From: Macrostomum lignano
Lineage: Eukaryota
Direction: 5' to 3'
DNA: 64,000 nucleotides
Assembly (NCBI GenBank): GCA_002269645.1
Contig: NIVC01001208.1
Coordinates: 1-64,000, forward strand
Position 1 is the first letter of the stretch; each line of letters opens with the position of its first letter. Made by a program: the position numbers and the translations under genes. Below, piece after piece: positions 1 through 47,423 of the stretch. The notes below the pieces were generated by a model. That model ran no database searches. It worked only from the letters and a program-made list of their open reading frames with translations, and was not told the DNA's origin.

Positions 1-7290
<7,290 letters not shown>

Positions 7291-17020: not shown

Positions 17021-17680
17021 CCCACCTTCAGGCTTATTGAGGGCATTGCTGAGATGTCAAGGGGGGAAGTTGATATGTTAAAGCTTGTGGGGGGGAATTA
17101 CTGACATGTCAAGGCTTACAAGGTTTGACAGGAGATTTTTTAAGATTTCAAGGATACATGTAGCTTATTAAAAAAACGTGTATTGCATTTCTTTGGCTCC
17201 CCAACGGGGGCGTAGATTGCTAGTTCTAACCTAAACCTAACTTAAAACCTAACCCTAACACAAACATCGGCAGTAAATTTGTGTTGTGCTGTCAACATAC
17301 TGATTCAGGTTAAACAATACTGAGGTGAAGAAAAACTCGAGGAAAAATCATTTCAATCTAATCAAAAATTCATTAGTGACTTGTATAGAAGACGTTAAAT
17401 AGTTCATTTAGTATGAAAAACACTTCAATATAAAAAACTGAAGCAAATTTATTATGCTCGGTCAATTGGTCAGTCATAAATTACAAAAACAGACAAGTAT
17501 ATAAGGATTTACTGCGTCACCAAGATAGCTCTACACCAAAACCATTATAGTCTTAGGAAAGCACCATTGCCCGCCAACGATAAGACGATATATAATTATA
17601 ATAATGCGATGGGAAGATTAAAAGAGGCACCATAATATCCCCGCCTGAACTTGTAGCAGTCCACCCACCGCGCGATAATT

Positions 17681-17713: not shown

Positions 17714-22199
<4,486 letters not shown>

Positions 22200-33284: not shown

Positions 33285-36200
33285 ATGCCCAAACGATGGG
33301 AAGTGTATCCAGGCAAGAGTCAGGTCCTCTGCAGTGGTCGCTGCATCTCGGCCAAGAATCTATCAGTGTTCTACCTCACTCTGGCCCTGATTGTCATCAG
33401 TTCGTGCCTATTTTTAGCATTCGACTGCAGGCTGCTAGCTGTGACTCTGTCTCCATCAGTGCCCGTCTTGGCCGCTGTGCAATTCATCTTTGTACTGTGC
33501 TGCCTGTTGAGAACTACATTTAGCGATCCCGGAATTATTCCTAGGGGCACGCCAGACGAAGCTGCCTGGATTGAATCTCAGCTGGGTGAGAGCTGGCTGC
33601 CTTGAAACTTTTGAGGGGTCAATTTTCTGTTTAGCTGCTGTGGCATTTAACTGTCGAAGTCATGTTTTTATGGGTTAAATAAAACCAATTGGAGACAAGT
33701 CGGAGTGAACTTTCGGTAAAAGTGTAGAATTATGTAGACACTGACGATAATTTTCATTAATTTACGAGTATCACTAAAATTTGTATCTAGATATATTACT
33801 AGTATATAAAAATACAGCAATCGATTAAGTATAAATAGTTTTTTTAGCTCTTTTAGTCTCTTTACATAGCTCCTAGAGGATTACGCAAGGTTTAGCATAA
33901 ACAAAGCTAGATTTTTTATTTGACTAACTAAATCCCTTGCATAAATTGCTTTTGTGCAAAGGTGCTTGCTACTTTAGATCAATATGCTGTCTAATTCACG
34001 TGTCACATTACTGAATGCTTACCGATCTGTGAAAGTGCTTTGCACGTATCGATGTTTTGCTGCTTTGCCACAATGCCACAATGTAAATTAAACATGGAAT
34101 TCTTTATTTGCATATTACCCTCGTGTGCTCTGGTCTTTTCTAAATACTATGGCATTCTGTTGCTCGATTCTGTCTGTTTTAAACATTGTTGTTGCGGCTA
34201 ATCAAAGGGCTAATGAGTGTTGCGGCTGATTAAAGGGCTAATGAGTGTTGCGGCTGATTAGAGGGCTAATGAGTGTTGCGGCTGATTAGAGGGCTAATGA
34301 GTGTTGCGGCTGATTAGAGGGCTAATGAGTGTGACGGAGCTGATTAAAGGGCTAATGAGTGTGACGGAGCTGATTAAAGGGCTAATGAGTGTGACGGAGC
34401 TGATCAAAGGGCTAATGAGTGTAACGGAGCTGATCAAAGGGCTAATGAGTGTGACGGAGCTGATTAAAGGGCTAATGAGTGTGACGGAGCTGATTAAAGG
34501 GCTAATGAGTGTGACGGAGCTGATCAAAGGGCTAATGAGTGTGACGGAGCTGATCAAAGGGCTAATGAGTGTGACGGAGCTGATCAAAGGGCTAATGAGT
34601 GTGACGGAGCTGATCAAAGGGCTAATGAGTGTGACGGAGCTGATCAAAGGGCTAATGAGTGTGACGGAGCTGATCAAAGGGCTAATGAGTGTGACGGAGC
34701 TGATCAAAGGGCTAATGAGTGTGACGGAGCTGATCAAAGGGCTAATGAGTGTGACGGAGCTGATCAAAGGGCTAATGAGTGTGACGGAGCTGATCCAAGG
34801 GCTAATGAGTGTGACGGAGCTGATCAAAAGTTAAAATGTGGCGGGGCTGATCAATGGGCAGCTTAGAGGCTAGTGATTACACAATCTAGTAATGAAAACC
34901 ACCCTTAGCGGTGAATGCGGTGTCCTAATTAATACTAATCTAAGTTCAATACTCGCCCCCCTCTCCTACCTGCCAGAGGGCCCCCAGGTCGATCGAGACG
35001 GCAATTACCGACCGCCTGTACGCCTGAAAGATGTACAGATTAATGGCAGGGTATTCAAGCTAAAGTACTGCTTCACCTGCAAACTGTGGCGTCCGCCAAG
35101 GTCGAGTCACTGCTCAACCTGCGACAATTGCGTGGATAGATTCGATCACCATTGCCCGTGGGTTGGCAACTGCGTTGGCAGGCGGAATTACCGTTATTTT
35201 TATCTGTTCCTGATCAGCTTGTCTGTTTATTGCCTATACGTTATGGTGTTCGGCATTGTTAATTTGGTGCTGCGTAAGTTTCTTTCTCGCTTTACAGCTT
35301 TGCTGTCAATGCTTGAGAATGTTCTGTCATTTAGTAATTACTCAATGCGAGCTCAAATGCAGTCTGAAAACAAAACGGGTCTATGAGCGTAAAATAAAAA
35401 AATAGTCTGATTTTAAGTGGGGGCTTCGCCTCTACACCCCCATTCCGCATTCCCACTGGGATCCTGATGCTATGGCCATTACCATGAAATCTCACTTCCA
35501 GACCAATTGCTGAACCAATTAGCGAGTTGTTTACGCCTGCAAGCTCGGGCTTCTAAACTTATCAAAGTCATTTCAGCTGCCTTTATTTTTATAAAATAGC
35601 CTATGTATTTATCTTTGCTACTGAACTGAAAGTAGAAAGCATATGCCTGAGTGGCCCATCTAGATACTTTAGTACCTATTCAAATATTTTCTATTTCAGT
35701 GTCCAACATGCGCAAAGATTTCCTAATGGCCATGAAGGAGTCGCCTACAAGATATCCTTTGTTACTTAGTTTATGAATTTTTTTCCTAATCACACTTTTT
35801 GTATTGAAGTGAAGTTATCATGATATTTTCCTTAACCCTGGCGCCGCCAACGTTAACTGTGCTCACTATACTAGTTGCATTTTTCTCTATCTGGTCGGTC
35901 GTCGGTCTTGGCGGCTTTCACACTATGCTTATCTGCAGGGAGACATCTACTAATGAGGATGTAAGTTATTTTTATTATCTTAATTTTATTGTTCTCACTT
36001 TCTCTGTTGGCTTGAAATATTAAAATAACTCTGAAATATTTACTGTTGGCTGGAATTTGTTATCTTACGAGTAGCACCCCTTCGTGTAGTTTGATTCCTA
36101 TTGGCTAGTCGTTATATGGCTTTGGAGTCCCTAAATCGTTTACTATTCACCGGTAGTGTAAATCGAAACCTATTGGCTGACAATCTAAATCGATATCATA

Positions 36201-38855
36201 TTCGCTGATAGTCTAAAATCAACTCATATTGGCTGACAGTAATCTAACATTGTCCCCTCACATCGATTCCTATCTGCTGGCAGAAATCTAACATTCGGTC
36301 CTCTTCACCGATTCCTATTGGCTTGCAGTAATCTAACTTTTGGTCCCCTTCACCGATTCCTATTGGCTGGCAGTAATCTAACCTTCTGTCCCCTTCATTG
36401 ATTCCTATTGGCTGGCAGGAATCTAACCTTCTGTCCCCTTCATTGATTCCTATTGGCTGGCAGTAATCTAACCTTCTGTCCCCTTCATTGATTCCTTTTG
36501 GCTTGCAGTAATCTAACCTTCTGTCCCCTTCATTGATTCCTATTGGCTGGCAGTAATCTAACCTTCTGTCACCTTCATTGATTTCTATTGGCTTGCAGTA
36601 ATCTAACTTTCGGTCCTCTTCACCGATTCCTATTGGCTTGCAGTAATCTAACTTTTGGTCCCCTTCACCGATTCCTATTGGCTGGCAGTAATCTAACCTT
36701 CTGTCCCCTTCATTGATTCCTATTGGCTGGCAGTAATCTAACCTTCTGTCCCCTTCATTGATTCCTATTGGCTGGCAGTAATCTAACCTTCTGTCCCCTT
36801 CATTGATTCCTATTGGCTGGCAGTAATCTAACCTTCTGTCCCCTTCATTGATTCCTTTTGGCTGGCAGTAATCTAACCTTCTGTCCCCTTCATTGATTCC
36901 TTTTGGCTGGCAGTAATCTAACCTTCTGTCACCTTCATTGATTTCTATTGGCTTGCAGTAATCTAACTTTCGGTCCCCTTCACCGATTCCTATTGGCTGG
37001 CAGTAATCTAACCTGTCCCCTTCATTGATTCCTATTGGCTTGCAGTAGTCTAACTTTCGCCCCCCTTACATCGATTCCTATTGGCTGGCAGTAATCTAGC
37101 CTCGTGTCACTGCATCGATTCCTATTGACTGGCTACTTTATTACTTTATTCCATGCTTACAATTCGCAGATCAAAGGCTCTTTTAATCAGCGACGCCACC
37201 CGGACCTAATAAATCCATTCGATCAAGGCAACGGCCTAGCAAATTGTTGCTTCGTACTATTCGGCCCGGTGACGCCTTCGCTATTAAATTTCAGAGAAGA
37301 TGAAATCGGACTCGGTTCCAGCATTAGTTTGGTTACTAACAATGGGCGCAACGGTGCTTCTGCAGCAGCAGCTAGTACTGCAGTAACAGCAACGCCAGCT
37401 GTGCGCTATTCAAATTTAACTCGCAACAATAACGACGCAGCTTCTAATAGCGTTGGACACGTTAATAATAGCGTACAGGTGATCAGCGAATCCTTACCTG
37501 CACAGCTGCCAGGTGACGGTAATGATGTGATTGTTAAGAATGGCAATGGCGCTCCTGCGGATGGAGTCATCTCTGGCGGTACTGATGCTGTCGGTGGTGA
37601 GTCAGTTTGCTTTGGGTTCGAATATTGTGCTCAAAATTTCAAGTTTTATAGCGGTAGTGGGTACCCACAAATGCAAATTAAGATTAGAAGTACTCACAGA
37701 AAAACCTATTTAGAATGCATTTACCAACAGAAATACCCATTTAGGATAGCATTACCCACAGAAATAGCCATTTAGAATAGCATTACCCACGGACATCCCA
37801 TTTAGGATGGCCAGTACCCACAGCAATGCCCATTTAGGATAGCAGTACCCATTTAGGGTAGCAGTACCTTCAGAAATACCTATTTAGCATAGTAGCAGTA
37901 CTATTAGGGGTAGCATTATGACCCACTAAGACACCCATTAGGGGTAGGCGGCAGCATTATGACCCACTAAGACACCCCATTGGGGTAAGCGGTAGCATTA
38001 TGACCCACTAAGACACCCATTAGGGGTAGGCGGTAGCATTATGACCCACTAAGACACCCCATTAGGGGTAGGAGGTAGCATTATGACCCACTAAGACACC
38101 CATTAGGGGTAGGCGGCAGCATTATGACCCACTAAGACACCCCATTGGGGTAAGCGGTAGCATTATGACCCACTAAGACACCCATTAGGGGTAGGCGGTA
38201 GCATTATGACCCACTAAGACACCCCATTAGGGGTAGGAGGTAGCATTATGACCCACTAAGACACCCATTAGGGGTAGGCGGCAGCATTATGACCCACTAA
38301 GACACCCCATTGGGGTAAGCGGTAGCATTATGACCCACTAAGACACCCATTAGGGGTAGGCGGTAGCATTATGACCCACTAAGACACCCATTAGGGGTAG
38401 GCGGTAGCATTTTGACCCACTAAGACACCCATTAGGGGTAGGCGGTAGCATTATGACCCACTAAGACACCCATTAGGGGTAGGCGGTAGCATTTTGACCC
38501 ACTAAGACACCCATTAGGGGTAGGCGGTAGCATTTTGACCCACTAAGACACCCATTAGGGGTAGGCGGTAGCATTATGACCCACTAAGACACCCATTAGG
38601 GGTAGGCGGTAGCATTTTGACCCACTAAGACACCCATTAGGGGTAGGCGGTAGCATTATGACCCACTAAGACACCCATTAGTGTTAGCACTGCAGTACAT
38701 TATGAATGATTTCTATTTCTATTTAAAATTGAATTATTATATATTCAACATATATTATTTTGTACTCATTAAATTTTCCTCACAAATTGCCCATCAACCT
38801 TGCAGCGCAGAATTCAAACACTCAGTCAGCCTCGTCAGTGCACTGCATTGTCTGA
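33285..38855 (+). CDS. ZDHHC9/14/18: DHHC palmitoyltransferase, ZDHHC9/14/18 (Erf2/app) subfamily
   Basis: Exons 33285-33585, 34977-35273, 35700-35751, 35858-35960, 37170-37596 and, less certainly, 38806-38855. Motifs [77 protein letters not shown]|[13 protein letters not shown]. Confidence 0.95.
34195..34830. repeat. 30-bp minisatellite
   Basis: Unit GCTAATGAGTGTGACGGAGCTGATCAAAGG, highly homogeneous; ZDHHC intron 1. Confidence 0.98.
35752..35857 (+). other. U12-type (minor spliceosome) AT-AC intron
   Basis: Donor ATATCCTTT at 35752, branch site TTTTCCTTAAC at 35826-35836, AC acceptor at 35857 (alternative 35851). Splicing gives ESPTS|[17 protein letters not shown]. Confidence 0.9.
36240..37110. 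repeat. 45-bp minisatellite
   Basis: Unit TATTGGCTGGCAGTAATCTAACCTTCTGTCCCCTTCATTGATTCC; intronic. Confidence 0.96.
37720..38690. repeat. 41-bp minisatellite preceded by degenerate related units
   Basis: Unit AGACACCCATTAGGGGTAGGCGGTAGCATTATGACCCACTA at 37900-38690. Confidence 0.95.
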
Positions 38856-41234: not shown

Positions 41235-44200
41235 ATGTCTCGAATTTCTTCCACTTACGGAAAGCAAGCGAATGACAGATCAGTTAAGTCTGCTTCCAAG
41301 ATGTATGGAGGTAAGAAAAATACAAATCTGCTGGTTACCGACTTACCGCGTTTGTTGCCCATTTACTACAACATTTAGATTAGATTTTGGATCATTGATT
41401 AATGGGATGCATCGAAGCTATAGAGTAAATGTATATTTATTTGGAGCTGCTGTCTCCAGTTTTTAGTCTCAGTTGTAACACAATAATTGTACACAATAAT
41501 AATAATGAAGTAAATTTAATTTCCCCTCGAAAGTTAAACAGTGTACAATGAAAGTTATTAAGTGAGCTTTAAAAATTGTTAATTATTTTTTGTGTAGTAA
41601 AAATGTATTTTCCATTAATATCAAGTTTTTTATGTTATTTTTTCATTATTTTTTTTCTGAACAAAAACAGTTCTTTTGAATTTTATACTCTTTGCTATGT
41701 TAAATTCCAGTTAACCCCTAGAAAAAATGCAAAAAGGTGCAGAAGCAACAAAATATTTAGCGCAGAATTTTTAGCCCATGATTTTTCTATTTTTCTTATT
41801 TTAGGAAACTACTTGACTGACAGTGGAAAATCTTTGACTCTCTCTGGCGAGCAACAGCTGAGAGGCTCCCAACAATTGACTAAGTCTGGAAAAAGGTACA
41901 AATGAATGTATTCCTTTGGTCTATTTCTAAGAATCTAGTTCTTTATTTCAGAATAACCATGTTAAATTTCGCATTTGATTTTCAATTTTAGCACAAAATC
42001 TTCATTTGCCGATTCGATTCGAACCAGCACTGGCGCCCTTGAACAAGAGTATATCAAATCACTCCAGCAACAAGTCTATCTGCTGGAATTGGAAAACAAT
42101 CATCTATATCCTTTTTAATTGAAATTTCTATATTTTCACTCATTTATAATTTATCAGATATTTTCTACAAGAAAGCCTAAGGTATTAAATAGCTAGGTTT
42201 ATTAATTTTTGCTTTTTTGACCATTAAATTTTTTAGTAATCCTTTGTGTCAACAAATTTAATAAAATTGATTTAACTGTTTCATCCATACATGTATTAAG
42301 AAACTCTGACTCTAACCAATAATCTAAATGAATAAGAAGTCAAAACTATAAATGTATATCGTTTTTTTATTTTCCCTTTGTTTCCAAGAAACAAATCAAT
42401 CGGTTAAGATTTTCCTTGACGCAGCATTCTCCATAAAATTTGCCCCGACTGATACGCGGTCACAGGCTGTGAAAGCCACTGAGCTTCACCCGACGATGGC
42501 TGCCGAGGCGGAGAAAATGTTGCGCGAATTGAAAGCTCTGCAAGCCAAGGTCGACGCGCTTCAATTGGAGAATTTTCGAAAAGAAGGCGCCGCTGAAGTC
42601 CTTCAGCAAAAGGTGCGTAAATAAAAACTAAAGGCGCCCGACACCGTAAACAAATGTGGGTATTAGTCATTGGTTCGTGAGCGTTCCCCAAATTAGGATC
42701 AAAGAGCTTGGTAAATATAAATTGTTACACCACTGTTAAAATGGTGTCTCTTCCGGATGATCCAAAATTAAACGTAGTTATTAAACGTAAGCCGCCAAAA
42801 TCCCAACCAACTCTCAGGTGAACGGACTCACCCAGAAGCTGACCCAGTACGAGGCCAGCCACAGCGAGGAGCGGGAACGATTCGACAAGGACAGCGCCGA
42901 GGCCCGCAGGGAGAGGGACATGTACCAGAGAGACGTGGGCCGACTGCAGATGCGACTCGGCGAGCTGCAAGAAGACTTCGATCACAAGCTGTCCGATCTG
43001 AAAGCGTCCGAGACTAAAGTGGCCACATTAAGAGGTGAGCAACTTTATATCCATTTTCGCCCATCTGCTTGTACAATCTTGACCAAAGTCATACTGATTG
43101 ATACGTGACCCGCATGGGGCAGAGCAGTTCAGCGCCTTGTCAAGCGACTGTCCCCCAGTATGAGTGCCTGCGGCGCCAAGTATGAGTGCCTGCGGCGCCA
43201 AGTATGAGTGCCTGCGGCGCCAAGTATGAGTGCCTGCGGCGCCAAGTATGAGTGCCTGCGGCGCCAAGTATGAGTGCCTGCGGTGCCAAGATGAGTGCCT
43301 GCGGCGCCAAGTATGAGTGCCTGCGGCGCCAAGTATGAGTGCCTGCGGCGCCAAGTATGAGTGCCTACGGCGCCAAGTATGAGTGCCTGCGGCGCCAAGT
43401 ATGAGTGCCTGCGGCGCCAAGTATGAGTGCCTGCGGCGCCAAGTATGAGTGCCTGCGGCGCCAAGTATGAGTGCCTGCGGCGCCAAGTATGAGTGCCTGC
43501 GGCGCCAAGTATGAGTGCCTGCGGCGCCAAGTATGAGTGCCTGCGGCGCCAAGTATGAGTGCCTGCGGCGCCAAGATGAGTGCCTGCGGCGCCAAGTATG
43601 AGTGCCTGCGGCGCCAAGTATGAGTGCCTGCGGCGCCAAGTATGAGTGCCTGCGGCGCCAAGTATGAGTGCCTGCGGCGCCAAGTATGAGTGCCTGCGGC
43701 GCCAAGATGAGTGCCTGCGGCGCCAAGTATGAGTGCCTGCGGCGCCAAGTATGAGTGCCTGCGGCGCCAAGATGAGTGCCTGCGGCGCCAAGTATGAGTG
43801 CCTTCAGCGCCTAAAAGAGTACCAGCGGCGCCAAATGAGCGCTGACAACACACCGATGCTGGAAATAATGTACATGTAAATGTAGAATTCTTGGCTTGTC
43901 CCCCACCACCATAAAATCCAAGGCGACATCCCTGCTGGCCACATGACTGTCGCAGATTACCCGCAGCCTAGTGCATGACTCATACTTCTATTTTTATTCT
44001 CCATTGCGATGCAATTTGCTCAGATTCCGAAAGCAACTCAAAGGCTCAAAGTACCATCAATTTTATCAGCGGTAATGTTGACTATTTATTCATTTATTTA
44101 TTGCCACACATTTTTGTTTATCCTGTTGTAAGCACGTGAAAAAATGTTTTGCTATACATTTTCTTGTTGTTGTTGTATCTAACAATTACGACTCTACCTA

Positions 44201-47200
44201 TAGTATACAGAAATCCCACGAAATAGACGTGTAGTTGTAATTTCCTATTTGGTGAAGGTAAAATGATCCAGAAAAATTTATTATCTGTTTAAACTATTTG
44301 TGTTAATTATCTCTATATCTATACACATTTACTTACATTGGTGTCTATCATTTGTTATACTGCACTTAAACCTCTTATTTGCCTTTCGTAGCTTTTATCC
44401 TTTTAAATGTATACCCGAAATTTATAGTGTTTTTTGGAACTACTACTGTTATTGTAGTAGGCTTCTATTGTATGTTACTGTATTTTTGTTTGTAAACGGG
44501 GTGCTAGCTTAGCGCTGAACACATCTACTGCCTATAGGATCTCCGAATCCTGGTGCGTGAAACTAGCAGGGTACCAACTTCTGGGGCCTTCTAGGTGGCC
44601 CTTTATGATTACCAGCCTTGCAGGGGGTCGATTTACAATTGCTGTGAGCACAGGTCAGATCACCCAGCACAATGGCAGCTCTAAGCAGCTAATAGTGCAA
44701 TCATCTTCCTGAAGTATGAGAAGCTCAGCCAAAAACGCAAAATCATCAGCCAGGCCGCCCCCAGGACACACTAGCAACCTCCGGGTACACCCACGATCTT
44801 AATGAGACCGGCCGTACTGAACATCATGTACACTTCGGACTGCTATGGATGTTTAATTTATGTAATAACTTGCAACGTTTGTTTTTACTATAGCTGACGT
44901 GGAGTAGAGACCCAGAAACAGCCATGTTTTACTGTTAACAATTACCAGTTATCTTATTTAGTAGCCATATATCATTCTGAGCTGACCGTTCAACCATCTC
45001 ACTCAAGGCCAGCTCGAGGCGGCTCTGGACAAACTGGCCGCGGCGGACTCGGCACTGACCGAGGAGCGAGCTCAAACTGCTCGGCTTGAGGCTCGAGTCC
45101 GAGTACTCGAAGTCGAACTAGCTAGCACCAATACGAAAGGTTTGGAACGAAATATTCGCGAACTACGAGACGAGAATTTGGCTTTAAAAGAACGACTCCG
45201 CCGGGAGCAGAGTAAAGCTCACGAAGAGACGCTTCTGCGCAGCAAGACGTTTGAAGAGACGTCGGCCCTGGTGAAGCAGAATGCCGCTTTGGAGCAGAAA
45301 GTGGTGGAGCTGGAGCGCCAGATTGAGGCGGAAAGAGACAAGTCGCATCAGTGGGCGGGACACGCGAGTGTCGAATCCGATGAGCTGGTGCGGCTCAGAG
45401 AGCGAGAAAAGACGCTTGAATATCAGGTTTGTAGCCTGTCTGAGTTCTAATTGGACGAAAAGCTCAAGTATGAAATTGGGGGAAGAGTTTGGGGTGGGTG
45501 GAGCCAGCTGATTGGGGGAAGGAGTTTAGGGTGGGTGGAGCCAGCTGATTGTCAGAAGGAGTTCGGGTAGGTGAGAGCCCGCTAATTGGAGGAAGGAGTT
45601 TGGGGTGGGTGGAGGCTGCTAATTGGGGGAAGGAGTTTGGGTTGGGTGGAGCAAGCTGATTGGAGGAAAGAGTTTGGGGTGGGTGGAGCGAGCTGATTGG
45701 GGGAAGAGTTTGGGGTGGGTGGAGCCAGCTGATTGGGGGAAGGAGTTTGGGGTGGGTGAAGCCAGCTGATTGGGGGAAGGAGTTTGGGGTGGGTGGAGCC
45801 AGCTGATTGGGGGAAGGAGTTTGGGGTGGGTGGAGCCAGCTGATTGGGGGAAGGAGTTTGGGGTGGGTGGAGCCAGCTGATTGGGGAAGGAGTTTGGGGT
45901 GGGTGGAGCCAGCTGATTGGGGGAAGGAGTTTGGGGTGGGTGGAGCCAGCTGATTGGGGGAAGGAGTTTGGGGTGGGTGGAGCCAGCTGATTGGGGGAAG
46001 GAGTTTGGGGTGGGTGGAGCCAGCTGATTGGGGGAAGGAGTTTGGGGTGGGTGGAGCCAGCTGATTGGGGGAAGGAGTTTGGGGTGGGTGGAGCCAGCTG
46101 ATTGGGGGAAGGAGTTTGGGGTGGGAGGAGCCAGCTGATTGGGGAGGAGGTTCAGGGTGGTTGGTGAGAGCCCGCTCTAATTGAGGGAAAGGGCTTGGGG
46201 TGGGTTTCAGCCAACTAAGGATAATACTAAAGCTGTTGACTTGGCTTTATCTTTCACATTTTCGCATTTACAACAACAATTTTTTGCGTTAAGCTTACTA
46301 AAAGTAGTGCGTACTGTAAAGCGCACGGTGAGTATAACCTTCAAACGATATTTACTATTCAGGTGTCTAGCGGTGTAGAAGAGGTGGCCAAGCTGCGCCT
46401 AAAAGTGCAACAGCTCACCCAGCAACTCAACGAAGCTTCCGAGACCAAGGACGCCGGCACCATCGACTTGACCGTCGCTCGGCGTCGCCTACAAGAGGCC
46501 GAGAACTCTCAGGCCAGCTTGTCGGACCAGCTAAGCAGATTGCAGCGGGACAAAGCCGAACTGGTTGCCCACGTTGACAGCCTTCAACAGGAGCTGATGA
46601 AGCGGGAGTCTGAGAAGGATGGATTGGCGAGGGCGCTGGATCGGGCGGAGCTGAGACTCAACGAATTGCAGGGCGAGGTGACTCGGCTGCAGCAGCTACA
46701 GGTTAGATAGGGTTTGCTTACCTTTTAGAGTTGGGTTTGCTTACCTGTTAGATTTGGGTTTTCTTACCTTTTAGAGTTGGGTTTGCTTACCTGTTAGATT
46801 TGGGTTTTCTTACCTTTTAGAGTTGGGTTTGCTTACCTGTTAGATTTGGGTTTTCTTACCTGTTAGATTTGGATTTGCTTACCTGTTAGATAGGGTTTGC
46901 TTACCTGTTAGATTTGGGTGTTCTTACCTGTTAGATTTGGATTTGCTTACCTGTTAGATAGGGTTTGCTTACCTGTTAGAGAATTTTTATTACACCTGCC
47001 CAAATGGGCAGATGTGCAACCGACAGCTCAGCCGCAGCTATTGCGTGGCGCATCTGAAGGCTGCGTACGGCTGTTCAGTCCAAGGACTGGGAGGGGGGTG
47101 CCAAACACACCCTCAGTTACCCTAGCAATGCTGGCACCCATTTTACAGATTGATCTGAATGGTCGAGAATCGAACCCCCCGACCTTTCAGCCATAAGTCT

Positions 47201-47423
47201 GACAACTCGATTTAGCTTGACTACCTCATACCTGTTGGGTCAAGTTGGGTCAGTTTCACGTGGGTCAGGTTGTGTTTGGCAAGAGCAACACCACAGCAAT
47301 CCTCCCACCTGATATCTGTTCTGTACAACTTTGCAGGCTACCCGCTGGTCGGAGGTGGAGAAAATGGCCGACACGCTTCGCTCTGCCGCCCACTCCAATT
47401 CTGTCCTGTTCGATAGCTATTAG
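41235..47423 (+). CDS. Long coiled-coil protein, family not recognised
   Basis: Phase-compatible exons 41235-41310, 41805-41895, 41992-42105, ~42456-42612, 42818-43034, optional 44024-44071, 45008-45426, 46363-46701, 47337-47423 (TAG). Sequence is rich in E/Q/R/K/L heptads (EQEYIKSLQQQVYLLELEN ... RWSEVEKMADTLRS). Confidence 0.85.
42106..42455 (+). other. Second U12-type AT-AC-class intron
   Basis: Donor ATATCCTTTT at 42106, branch site TTTTCCTTGAC at 42410-42420, frame-preserving AC acceptors at 42449 or 42455. An in-frame TAA follows the donor if the intron is not spliced. Confidence 0.8.
43150..43830. repeat. 22-bp minisatellite inside a dispersed repeat
   Basis: Unit AGTATGAGTGCCTGCGGCGCCA, about 30 copies. 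The right flank 43830-43935 matches 53130-53225. Confidence 0.96.
44560..44820 (-). mobile_element. Degenerate non-LTR reverse transcriptase fragment
   Basis: Minus strand encodes GVPGGC and, in a shifted frame, ADDFAFLAE, resembling the RT motifs GVxQG and YADD; contains stops. Confidence 0.45.
45480..46200. repeat. 37-bp G-rich minisatellite
   Basis: Unit AGTTTGGGGTGGGTGGAGCCAGCTGATTGGGGGAAGG. Confidence 0.96.
46703..46980. repeat. ~22-bp minisatellite starting at a splice donor
   Basis: Unit CTGTTAGAT(A/T)(G/T)GGTTTGCTTAC. Confidence 0.9.
46985..47235 (-). mobile_element. CORE-like SINE copy with an internal deletion
   Basis: Near-identical to 16780-16935 over ~150 bp; tRNA-like head with GGTTCGATTC on the minus strand; CORE segment missing. 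Confidence 0.8.

What the first reader, a model, noticed from the sequence alone, without database searches (positions are those of the whole stretch)
35752..35857. AT-AC minor-spliceosome intron in the DHHC palmitoyltransferase gene
Seen in sequence: donor ATATCCTTT, branch site TTTTCCTTAAC and AC acceptor. Reading through gives a stop within ~10 codons and no good GT donor is nearby. Splicing restores ESPTS|VLTILVAFF, collinear with my recollection of ZDHHC9-type sequences. Established knowledge: U12 splicing has been lost repeatedly in animal lineages, and GT-AG-only gene predictors mis-annotate such introns. Inference: this genome retains a functional minor spliceosome.
Basis: partly seen in the sequence, partly recalled or inferred. 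Interest (0 to 1): 0.7.

Follow-up and report, generated by a model that had tools for sequence, protein, structure and literature searches.

The report
Conserved AT-AC minor intron, flatworm ZDHHC gene
The 106-base stretch is a genuine AT-AC (U12-type) intron in a Macrostomum lignano palmitoyltransferase gene; it is an ancient intron shared with corals, annelids, amphioxus and mammals and is already used in the public annotation, so it is real but ordinary.

Summary
**Observation: confirmed.** The window is Macrostomum lignano contig NIVC01001208.1, bases 1-64000.
- Window 35752-35857 starts aag|ATATCCTTT.
- It carries TTTTCCTTAAC at 35826-35836 and ends in AC.
- Splicing 35751/35858, together with five GT-AG introns, reproduces GenBank protein PAA70750.1 exactly. 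That annotation was built from a transcriptome.

**Conservation.**
- Two 67-69 % identical paralogues keep the same donor 9-mer and branch 11-mer in otherwise dissimilar introns.
- An AT-AC intron sits at the same codon position in a coral, Capitella, amphioxus and tree-shrew ZDHHC9. Daphnia has lost it.

**Gene predictors.** Older Macrostomum models and the Capitella model skip the 52-nt exon.

**Second intron.** The neighbouring coiled-coil gene has another AT-AC intron at 42106-42455. Two donor + branch-site pairs are seen in the window, against 0.011 expected by chance.

**Interpretation: supported.** A working minor spliceosome is strongly implied. Its snRNAs and proteins could not be searched.

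**Novelty: low.**
- ZDHHC18 is named as a minor-intron gene.
- Schistosomes are known to have minor snRNAs.

**One oddity.** In all five Macrostomum introns the branch A lies 22-36 nt from the 3' splice site. The same intron in other animals has 10-11 nt, and the published optimum is 11-13 nt.

The parts
33285..38855 (+). CDS span of the ZDHHC9/14/18-type palmitoyltransferase gene BOX15_Mlig030425g1 (PAA70750.1, 409 aa). Exons: 33285-33585, 34977-35273, 35700-35751, 35858-35960, 37170-37596, 38806-38855.
   Evidence: The exon model translates to a protein found by exact look-up as PAA70750.1. The annotated gene range in NIVC01001208.1 is 33285-38855, and that locus is identical to the window. 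Pfam DHHC. Best PDB hit is ZDHHC9.
35700..35751 (+). 52-nt mini-exon 3 (..[17 protein letters not shown] + AG of the split Ser codon), lying between a GT-AG intron and the AT-AC intron.
   Evidence: Older gene models skip it.
35752..35857 (+). AT-AC U12-type intron, 106 nt, phase 2.
   Evidence: No other junction placement reproduces the codons ACA AGT GTG (T-S-V) of the annotated protein (checked by hand from the sequence read).
35752..35760 (+). U12-type 5' splice site ATATCCTTT.
   Evidence: The same 9-mer is present in paralogue loci L001, L002 and L003.
35826..35836 (+). U12-type branch-site motif TTTTCCTTAAC. The presumed branch A is at 35835.
   Evidence: It is the only match (2 mismatches or fewer) to TTCCTTRAC in the last 60 nt. 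The 11-mer is identical in L001-L003.
35856..35857 (+). 3'-terminal AC that is used, 22 nt downstream of the branch A.
   Evidence: Annotated protein reads TS|VL. The alignment to ZDHHC9 has no gap here. Distance.
35850..35851 (+). Proximal in-frame AC, 16 nt from the branch A. It is not used in the annotation. If used it would replace Ser217 by Arg-Leu-Thr (net +2 residues: ...SPTRLTVLTIL...).
35858..35960 (+). Exon 4 ([34 protein letters not shown]).
41235..47423 (+). Neighbouring coiled-coil gene BOX15_Mlig013940g1 (PAA70751.1 = P0128, 499 aa). It has 8 exons, with six GT-AG introns and one AT-AC intron.
   Evidence: The whole of P0128 maps exactly to the window in 8 blocks. Intron boundaries resolved.
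42106..42455 (+). Second AT-AC U12-type intron (350 nt, phase 2). Donor tct|ATATCCTTTT; 3' end GATAC|g; junction peptide ENNHL|RSQAVK.
   Evidence: An mRNA contig of a relative (L009) reads HLRSK across the junction.
42410..42420 (+). Branch-site motif TTTTCCTTGAC of the second intron, with the branch A 36 nt from the 3' splice site. An unused in-frame AC lies at 42448-49.

Best explanation
Window 35752-35857 is a U12-dependent (minor-spliceosome) intron of the AT-AC subtype in the Macrostomum lignano ZDHHC9/14/18-type palmitoyltransferase gene BOX15_Mlig030425g1.

**Mechanism, inferred from established knowledge of U12 splicing.**
- U11 snRNA, and later U6atac, pairs with the ATATCCTTT donor.
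- U12 snRNA pairs with TTCCTTAAC and bulges the branch adenosine, near 35835.
- The AC at 35856-57 is used as the 3' splice site.
- This joins AG|T to make the Ser codon in ...KESPTS|VLTILVAFF....

**Origin.** The intron was inherited from the eumetazoan ancestor of the ZDHHC9/14/18 family. It persists in all three Macrostomum paralogue lineages.

**Shown here.**
- The sequence signals.
- Use of the junction in the transcriptome-derived annotation.
- Conservation among paralogues and across phyla.

**Inferred.**
- Dependence on U11/U12/U4atac/U6atac.
- The presence of those components in this genome.
For: - Perfect U12 consensus at the donor and branch site, with AT-AC termini.
- The six-exon model using this junction equals GenBank PAA70750.1 exactly. 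That annotation derives from RNA-seq and de novo transcripts, not ab initio prediction (PMC5730564).
- Paralogues P0002 and P0003 (69 % and 67 % protein identity) have an AT-AC intron at the same codon.
  - Both carry the identical ATATCCTTT and TTTTCCTTAAC.
  - The rest of the intron differs in length (136 and 111 nt) and is poorly alignable.
- An AT-AC intron with U12 motifs lies at the same position and phase in Oculina, Branchiostoma, Tupaia ZDHHC9 and Capitella.
- ZDHHC18 is named as a minor-intron gene in bioRxiv 10.64898/2026.08.20.745718.
- No GT/GC-AG alternative reproduces the annotated or homologous protein.
- A second, unrelated AT-AC intron with the same signals lies 6 kb downstream and is also in the annotation.
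- Donor + branch-site pairs: 2 observed against 0.011 expected.
- Minor snRNAs are documented in another flatworm genus, Schistosoma (PMC2770079; PMC10639083).
Against: - No U11, U12, U4atac or U6atac gene was seen. Only this window could be scanned, and Rfam gave 0 hits.
- No minor-spliceosome protein of M. lignano was examined.
- RNA-seq reads were not inspected directly. The mRNA evidence is second-hand, through the annotation.
- The branch A to 3' splice site distance is 22 nt, outside the 11-13 nt optimum reported for U12 introns (PMC3584512). A closer in-frame AC at 16 nt is passed over.
Confidence: 0.93

Rival explanations
1. The intron is removed with the AT-AC junction, but by the major (U2-type) spliceosome. 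That would make it either a U2-type AT-AC intron, or a relic in a genome that has lost minor splicing.
For: No minor snRNA or minor-spliceosome protein of this genome was seen. The long branch-site to 3' splice site spacing (22-36 nt) is more typical of U2-type introns.
Against: U2-type AT-AC introns have GTAAGT-like donors (ATAAGT) and no TCCTTAAC box (established knowledge). Here the donor 9-mer and branch 11-mer match the U12 consensus exactly. They are invariant across three old paralogues whose introns otherwise diverged, which implies selection on U11/U12 pairing. A second intron has the same signals. There is no marked T-rich tract before the 3' end.
Confidence: 0.03
2. The real mRNA uses a GT/GC-AG junction nearby, as in UniProt models P0125 or P0126. 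The AT-AC model would then be an annotation artefact.
For: Frame-preserving GT/GC-AG combinations exist. Older predicted proteins use such junctions, or skip the mini-exon.
Against: Those models insert [14 protein letters not shown], or delete about 22 conserved residues, relative to every homologue. Their donors are weak. The transcriptome-derived annotation of three gene copies and two paralogues uses the AT-AC junction. The same junction type is conserved across phyla.
Confidence: 0.02
3. The proximal AC (35850-51, exon starting at 35852) is also used, giving a minor isoform in which Ser217 is replaced by Arg-Leu-Thr (net +2 residues: ...SPTRLTVLTIL...). This adds to the main explanation rather than replacing it.
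For: It is in frame and lies 16 nt from the branch A, nearer the published optimum than the annotated site. U12-type 3' splice-site choice is reported to be error-prone (PMC3584512).
Against: None of the six annotated or predicted M. lignano proteins of this cluster contains RLTVL. Homologues show no insertion here. In paralogues L002 and L003 the only nearer ACs would shift the frame.
Confidence: 0.15

Closest known systems
Minor (U12-type) intron of vertebrate ZDHHC9/14/18. ZDHHC18 is named as a minor-intron-containing gene in bioRxiv 10.64898/2026.08.20.745718. The Tupaia ZDHHC9 intron was examined here.
   Same: Same codon position and phase (…SP-x-S/T | V/I-L…). AT-AC termini. ATATCCT(T/C) donor and TTCCTTAAC branch site. 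Same gene family.
   Different: Branch A to 3' splice site is 22 nt here, against 11 nt in Tupaia and 10-11 nt in coral, amphioxus and Capitella. The intron is 106 nt here; in Tupaia 938 nt separate the two flanking peptide anchors, about 935 nt of intron.
U12-type intron of ZDHHC8 / Drosophila CG34449, conserved between fly and human (PMC2831892, PMC2952598).
   Same: A DHHC palmitoyltransferase gene with an evolutionarily old minor intron.
   Different: That intron is of the GT-AG subtype and lies in the ZDHHC5/8 subfamily. Whether its position is homologous to this one was not tested.
Minor spliceosome of schistosomes (U11, U12, U4atac and U6atac found in S. mansoni and S. japonicum, PMC2770079; minor introns in Schistosoma, PMC10639083).
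   Same: Same phylum. This shows that flatworms can retain minor splicing.
   Different: That evidence is snRNA genes in parasitic Neodermata. Here the evidence is introns in a free-living macrostomorph, and no snRNA was seen. No paper in the searchable library mentions Macrostomum together with U12 or the minor spliceosome.
U2-type AT-AC introns.
   Same: AT-AC terminal dinucleotides.
   Different: These lack the ATATCCTT donor and the TCCTTAAC branch box, both of which are present here (established knowledge).

Membership tests
U12-type (minor-spliceosome) intron, AT-AC subtype | 5' splice site matching /ATATCCTT | tested here: met
   aag|ATATCCTTT at 35752-35760.
U12-type (minor-spliceosome) intron, AT-AC subtype | Branch-site box TCCTTAAC near the 3' end | tested here: met
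   TTTTCCTTAAC at 35826-35836. It is the only match with 2 mismatches or fewer in the last 60 nt.
U12-type (minor-spliceosome) intron, AT-AC subtype | Terminal AC paired with an AT start | tested here: met
   AC at 35856-57. It is the only placement that reproduces the annotated protein (hand check).
U12-type (minor-spliceosome) intron, AT-AC subtype | Short branch-site to 3' splice site distance (typical feature; optimum 11-13 nt, PMC3584512) | tested here: inconclusive
   The distance to the used AC is 22 nt, and 16 nt to the unused in-frame AC. This is outside the optimum. However, the intron is orthologous to AT-AC introns with the same U12-type donor and branch box that have 10-11 nt, and four other M. 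lignano AT-AC introns show 22-36 nt.
U12-type (minor-spliceosome) intron, AT-AC subtype | No strong polypyrimidine tract | tested here: inconclusive
   In the last 25 nt the T fraction is 0.16 and pyrimidines 0.56, with no T run. Several GT-AG introns of the same two genes are equally T-poor, so this does not discriminate.
U12-type (minor-spliceosome) intron, AT-AC subtype | Position orthologous to U12-type introns in other lineages | tested here: met
   Same position, same phase, AT-AC termini and U12 motifs in Oculina, Branchiostoma and Tupaia ZDHHC9 and Capitella. Absent in Daphnia.
U12-type (minor-spliceosome) intron, AT-AC subtype | Junction present in mRNA | tested here: met
   Indirect. 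The transcriptome-derived GenBank CDS PAA70750.1 equals the spliced translation. Reads were not inspected.
U12-type (minor-spliceosome) intron, AT-AC subtype | Excision depends on U11, U12, U4atac and U6atac snRNPs | not testable with these tools
   This needs a knock-down or in vitro splicing.
U12-type (minor-spliceosome) intron, AT-AC subtype | Genome encodes the minor snRNAs and minor-specific proteins | not testable with these tools
   Only the 64-kb window could be scanned with Rfam, with 0 hits. The rest of the assembly is not searchable here.
ZDHHC9/14/18 subfamily of DHHC palmitoyltransferases | DHHC cysteine-rich domain with the DHHC motif | tested here: met
   PF01529, E 2.3e-40, residues 128-253. 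The motif reads [24 protein letters not shown].
ZDHHC9/14/18 subfamily of DHHC palmitoyltransferases | Closest to ZDHHC9/14/18 rather than to other DHHC subfamilies | tested here: met
   PDB ZDHHC9 E 1e-110, against ZDHHC5 2e-53 and ZDHHC20 4e-23. The named best hits are ZDHHC9, 14 and 18.
ZDHHC9/14/18 subfamily of DHHC palmitoyltransferases | Protein S-acyltransferase activity | not testable with these tools
   This needs a biochemical assay.

The most novel reading that the evidence does not exclude
Minor-spliceosome introns of Macrostomum lignano may operate with a branch-site to 3' splice site spacing two to three times the canonical one.

- All five AT-AC introns seen here have the branch A 22-36 nt from the 3' splice site. 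They comprise two near-identical copies of the DHHC intron, two older paralogues, and one unrelated gene.
- The orthologous intron in a coral, an annelid, amphioxus and a mammal has 10-11 nt. The published optimum is 11-13 nt.
- In both window introns a nearer in-frame AC is skipped.

If this holds genome-wide, it points to a lineage-specific change in how the minor spliceosome finds its 3' splice site. It would also mean that classifiers with a tight distance window under-count minor introns in this lineage.
Probability: 0.35. Interest if true: 0.45.

Novelty: new member of a known kind. Interest (0 to 1): 0.2.

Why it matters
**What it shows.**
- A free-living, early-branching flatworm used as a regeneration and transgenesis model keeps U12-type introns. 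By strong implication it also keeps a working minor spliceosome.
- No paper in the searchable library mentions Macrostomum together with U12 or the minor spliceosome.

**Practical lesson.**
- GT-AG-only gene models of this very gene, and of its Capitella orthologue, are wrong around the 52-nt exon.
- Transgene or knock-down designs and orthology tables should use the transcript-based model.

**Conceptual weight.** The intron is an old, conserved minor intron of the ZDHHC9/14/18 family, and the junction is already in GenBank. The main finding is therefore confirmatory rather than surprising.

**Worth following up.** Only the unusually long branch-site to 3' splice site spacing.

Tried and rejected
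- **Rfam on the window.** A gathering-threshold scan of the whole window for snRNAs gave 0 hits. This is uninformative for the genome as a whole.
- **GT/GC-AG and other AT-AC junctions.** I enumerated every frame-preserving, stop-free option around the site, 30 in all. None but 35752-35857 gives the annotated or homologous protein, so these were rejected.
- **A hairpin shortening the long branch-site to 3' splice site distance.** The four folded segments show no consistent or significant structure, with z-scores from -1.5 to +1.1. Rejected.
- **A nearer branch-site-like motif.** None with 2 mismatches or fewer lies in the last 60 nt of any of the five introns.
- **Other U12-like donors.**
  - In the window, GTATCCTT occurs on the minus strand at 17157 and 13515. 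Neither has a nearby branch box, so they are probably chance.
  - Loci L001-L003 and L008 hold no further credible candidate. The one extra donor-like match, GTATCCTT at L001:2691, has no branch box of its own within range.
- **A 93-aa two-exon query for the coiled-coil gene.** It returned 'no homologue'. This was a false negative of the word index; the 427-aa query found the annotated protein.
- **Published gene lists.**
  - Text search for ZDHHC9 with 'minor intron' found no paper.
  - The survey supplement held no Macrostomum, Schmidtea or S. mansoni entry.
  - Three papers searched for ZDHHC9/14/18 held no supplement text.
- **Lineus orthologue locus.** Not on record.
- **First Markov-chain simulation.** It timed out and was replaced by mononucleotide shuffles.
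Full report
**What the window is**

The best protein hits to the spliced gene are Macrostomum lignano proteins. A six-exon model (33285-33585, 34977-35273, 35700-35751, 35858-35960, 37170-37596, 38806-38855) translates to 409 residues. An exact-sequence look-up finds this protein as PAA70750.1, 'hypothetical protein BOX15_Mlig030425g1 [Macrostomum lignano]'.

The encoding record is NIVC01001208.1 of GCA_002269645.1. The gene spans 33285-38855 there, and the fetched stretch is identical to the window at the same coordinates. The window is therefore bases 1-64000 of that contig.

**The observation**

The sequence reads ...GAG TCG CCT ACA AG|ATATCCTTTGTT...ATATTTTCCTTAACCCTGGCGCCGCCAACGTTAAC|T GTG CTC ACT....

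- The donor ATATCCTTT is at 35752-35760.
- The branch box TTTTCCTTAAC is at 35826-35836.
- The terminal AC is at 35856-57, with another in-frame AC at 35850-51.
- Reading through gives RYPLLLSL and a TGA at 35774-76.
- The other four introns of the gene are GT-AG.

Singly, the two motifs are no more frequent in the window than chance. A same-strand donor + branch-box pair is expected 0.011 times per shuffled window and occurs twice, each time exactly at an annotated exon boundary.

I enumerated all frame-preserving, stop-free GT/GC-AG and AT-AC junctions around the site. Only 35752-35857 yields ...[16 protein letters not shown].... That sequence is identical to the annotated protein and aligns to human ZDHHC9 (PDB 8hf3) without a gap.

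**The gene**

- Pfam DHHC (PF01529), E 2.3e-40.
- PDB ZDHHC9, E 1e-110, far better than ZDHHC5 or ZDHHC20.
- The named homologues are ZDHHC9, 14 and 18 across animals.

**mRNA evidence**

The BOX15_ annotation in GenBank was built from a genome-guided transcriptome. It used the de novo assembly mapped with BLAT, RNA-seq mapped with STAR and assembled with StringTie/TACO, and ORFs called by TransDecoder. It was not an ab initio prediction (PMC5730564).

The AT-AC junction is used in three near-identical gene copies (g1, g2, g3) and in two diverged paralogues (P0002, P0003). I did not see reads, so this evidence is indirect.

**Conservation within the genome**

I fetched the loci of P0001 (a 99 % identical copy), P0002 (69 %) and P0003 (67 %).

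- All have an AT-AC intron at the same codon, with identical ATATCCTTT and TTTTCCTTAAC.
- The P0002 and P0003 introns differ in length (136 and 111 nt) and are poorly alignable outside the motifs.

This is the pattern expected if the U11/U6atac and U12 pairing sites are under selection.

**Conservation across animals**

| Species | Locus | Sequence at the site |
|---|---|---|
| Oculina patagonica (coral) | L005 | AG\|ATATCCTTT...TTTTCCTTAACTGTTCTTAC\|T |
| Branchiostoma lanceolatum | L006 | AG\|ATATCCTTT...TTCCTTGACCCCCTGCAC\|T |
| Tupaia chinensis ZDHHC9 | L007 | AC\|ATATCCTC...TTCCTTAACCTCACCTCAC\|T |
| Capitella teleta | L004 | AG\|ATATCCTTG...TTCCTTGACAGCCGCTCAC\|T |
| Daphnia magna | L010 | no intron (...GCC AGT GTT...) |

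The intron is therefore at least as old as the cnidarian-bilaterian ancestor, and Macrostomum has simply kept it.

In the literature:
- ZDHHC18 is named as a minor-intron-containing gene (bioRxiv 10.64898/2026.08.20.745718).
- ZDHHC8 has a GT-AG-type U12 intron conserved between fly and human (PMC2831892).
- I found no text naming ZDHHC9 with 'minor intron'.

**Mis-annotation**

- UniProt model P0125 reads ...[24 protein letters not shown].... It skips the mini-exon and translates part of the intron.
- P0126 and P0127 read ...NLVLLAFFSIW..., deleting 22 residues.
- P0005 does the same for the P0003 paralogue.
- The Capitella JGI model P0022 reads through a GT donor (...LRKSSSSSSSPLT...) and misses the mini-exon, although the AT-AC intron is plainly in the DNA.

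**A second AT-AC intron**

Scanning the window for U12-like donors gave a second case at 42106 (tct|ATATCCTTTT). Its branch box TTTTCCTTGAC is at 42410-42420.

It lies in the next gene, a coiled-coil protein (BOX15_Mlig013940g1, PAA70751.1 = P0128). All 499 of its residues map exactly to the window in eight exons.

- Six of its introns are GT-AG.
- The third is AT-AC, 42106-42455, giving ...ENNHL|RSQAVK....
- My first guess at its 3' end (42449) was wrong. The annotation uses the AC at 42454-55.
- The duplicate locus L008 has the same signals.
- An mRNA contig from a 40 %-identical relative (L009, run SRR28338163) reads HLRSK across the junction.

Two unrelated genes with U12-type introns in one 64-kb window make a working minor spliceosome in this genome very likely. 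Flatworm precedent exists: Schistosoma has all four minor snRNAs (PMC2770079) and minor introns (PMC10639083). No paper in the searchable library links Macrostomum with U12 or the minor spliceosome.

**What remains untested**

The snRNAs and minor-specific proteins of M. lignano were not tested. Rfam found nothing in the window, and the rest of the assembly cannot be searched with these tools.

**An oddity**

The distance from the presumed branch A to the last intron base is as follows.

| Intron | Distance (nt) |
|---|---|
| M. lignano, window DHHC | 22 |
| M. lignano, P0001 copy | 22 |
| M. lignano, P0002 paralogue | 31 |
| M. lignano, P0003 paralogue | 25 |
| M. lignano, coiled-coil gene | 36 |
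| Oculina | 10 |
| Branchiostoma | 10 |
| Tupaia | 11 |
| Capitella | 11 |

- The published optimum is 11-13 nt (PMC3584512). The minor branch site is described as having a well-defined distance constraint (PMC11347168).
- No alternative branch box lies closer.
- No hairpin shortens the path.
- In both window introns an in-frame AC 6 nt upstream is passed over.

With at most three or four independent observations, this is a lead and not a result.

**Verdict**

- The thing itself is an ordinary, ancient, already-annotated minor intron.
- Interest is low (0.2).
- The spacing anomaly is the only part that might repay a genome-wide look.

Noticed in passing
window 42106-42455 (+): A second AT-AC U12-type intron lies in the neighbouring coiled-coil gene BOX15_Mlig013940g1. 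Donor ATATCCTTTT; branch box TTTTCCTTGAC at 42410-42420; junction peptide ENNHL|RSQAVK. It is in the GenBank annotation, and an mRNA contig from a relative reads across the same junction.
   Followed up: yes
window 35835-35857 and 42419-42455; L001, L002, L003: In all five M. lignano AT-AC introns the branch A to 3' splice site distance is 22-36 nt. The orthologous DHHC intron of coral, annelid, amphioxus and tree shrew has 10-11 nt, and the published optimum is 11-13 nt. No closer branch box and no hairpin explains it.
   Followed up: partly
window 35850-51 and 42448-49: In both window AT-AC introns an in-frame AC lies exactly 6 nt upstream of the used AC and is not used in the annotation. 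This could be coincidence or potential alternative 3' splice sites.
   Followed up: partly
proteins P0005, P0125, P0126, P0127 (M. lignano, UniProt A0A1I8*) and P0022 (Capitella; locus L004:6545-6653): Older or ab initio gene models skip the 52-nt exon or translate intron sequence, because they cannot place an AT-AC intron. The Capitella JGI model reads through a GT donor into a poly-Ser run.
   Followed up: yes
L010 (Daphnia magna), around 2351-2395: The intron is precisely absent (...GCC AGT GTT...), so Daphnia magna has lost this old minor intron.
   Followed up: partly
L001 (NIVC01002078.1), L008 (NIVC01002305.1) and the window (NIVC01001208.1): The DHHC gene has three near-identical copies (g1-g3) on different contigs. 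The coiled-coil gene follows it in the window and on L008. The copies differ by SNPs and small indels. This fits the duplicated genome of the DV1 line described in PMC5730564.
   Followed up: partly
window 34197-34828, 36227-37133, 37905-38681, 43157-43834, 45475-46144: Large minisatellite arrays (units of 22-45 nt, 18-31 copies, 89-97 % matches) fill the GT-AG introns of both genes. The two AT-AC introns contain none.
   Followed up: no
window 17882-20634, 6241-7031, 50329-51013, 56005-56692: Very long tetranucleotide microsatellites: (AGAT)n of 2.7 kb, plus (CAGA)n, (ATCT)n and (TCTG)n. They explain the extreme GC/AT skew in the composition profile.
   Followed up: no
tool behaviour: A 93-aa query spanning two exons returned 'no homologue', although a protein identical over those two exons apart from the two residues (L-D-T for L) added by my misplaced acceptor is in the database. 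The 427-aa query found a 96 %-identical cluster representative. Negative results from short queries in the word-indexed search should not be trusted.
   Followed up: yes
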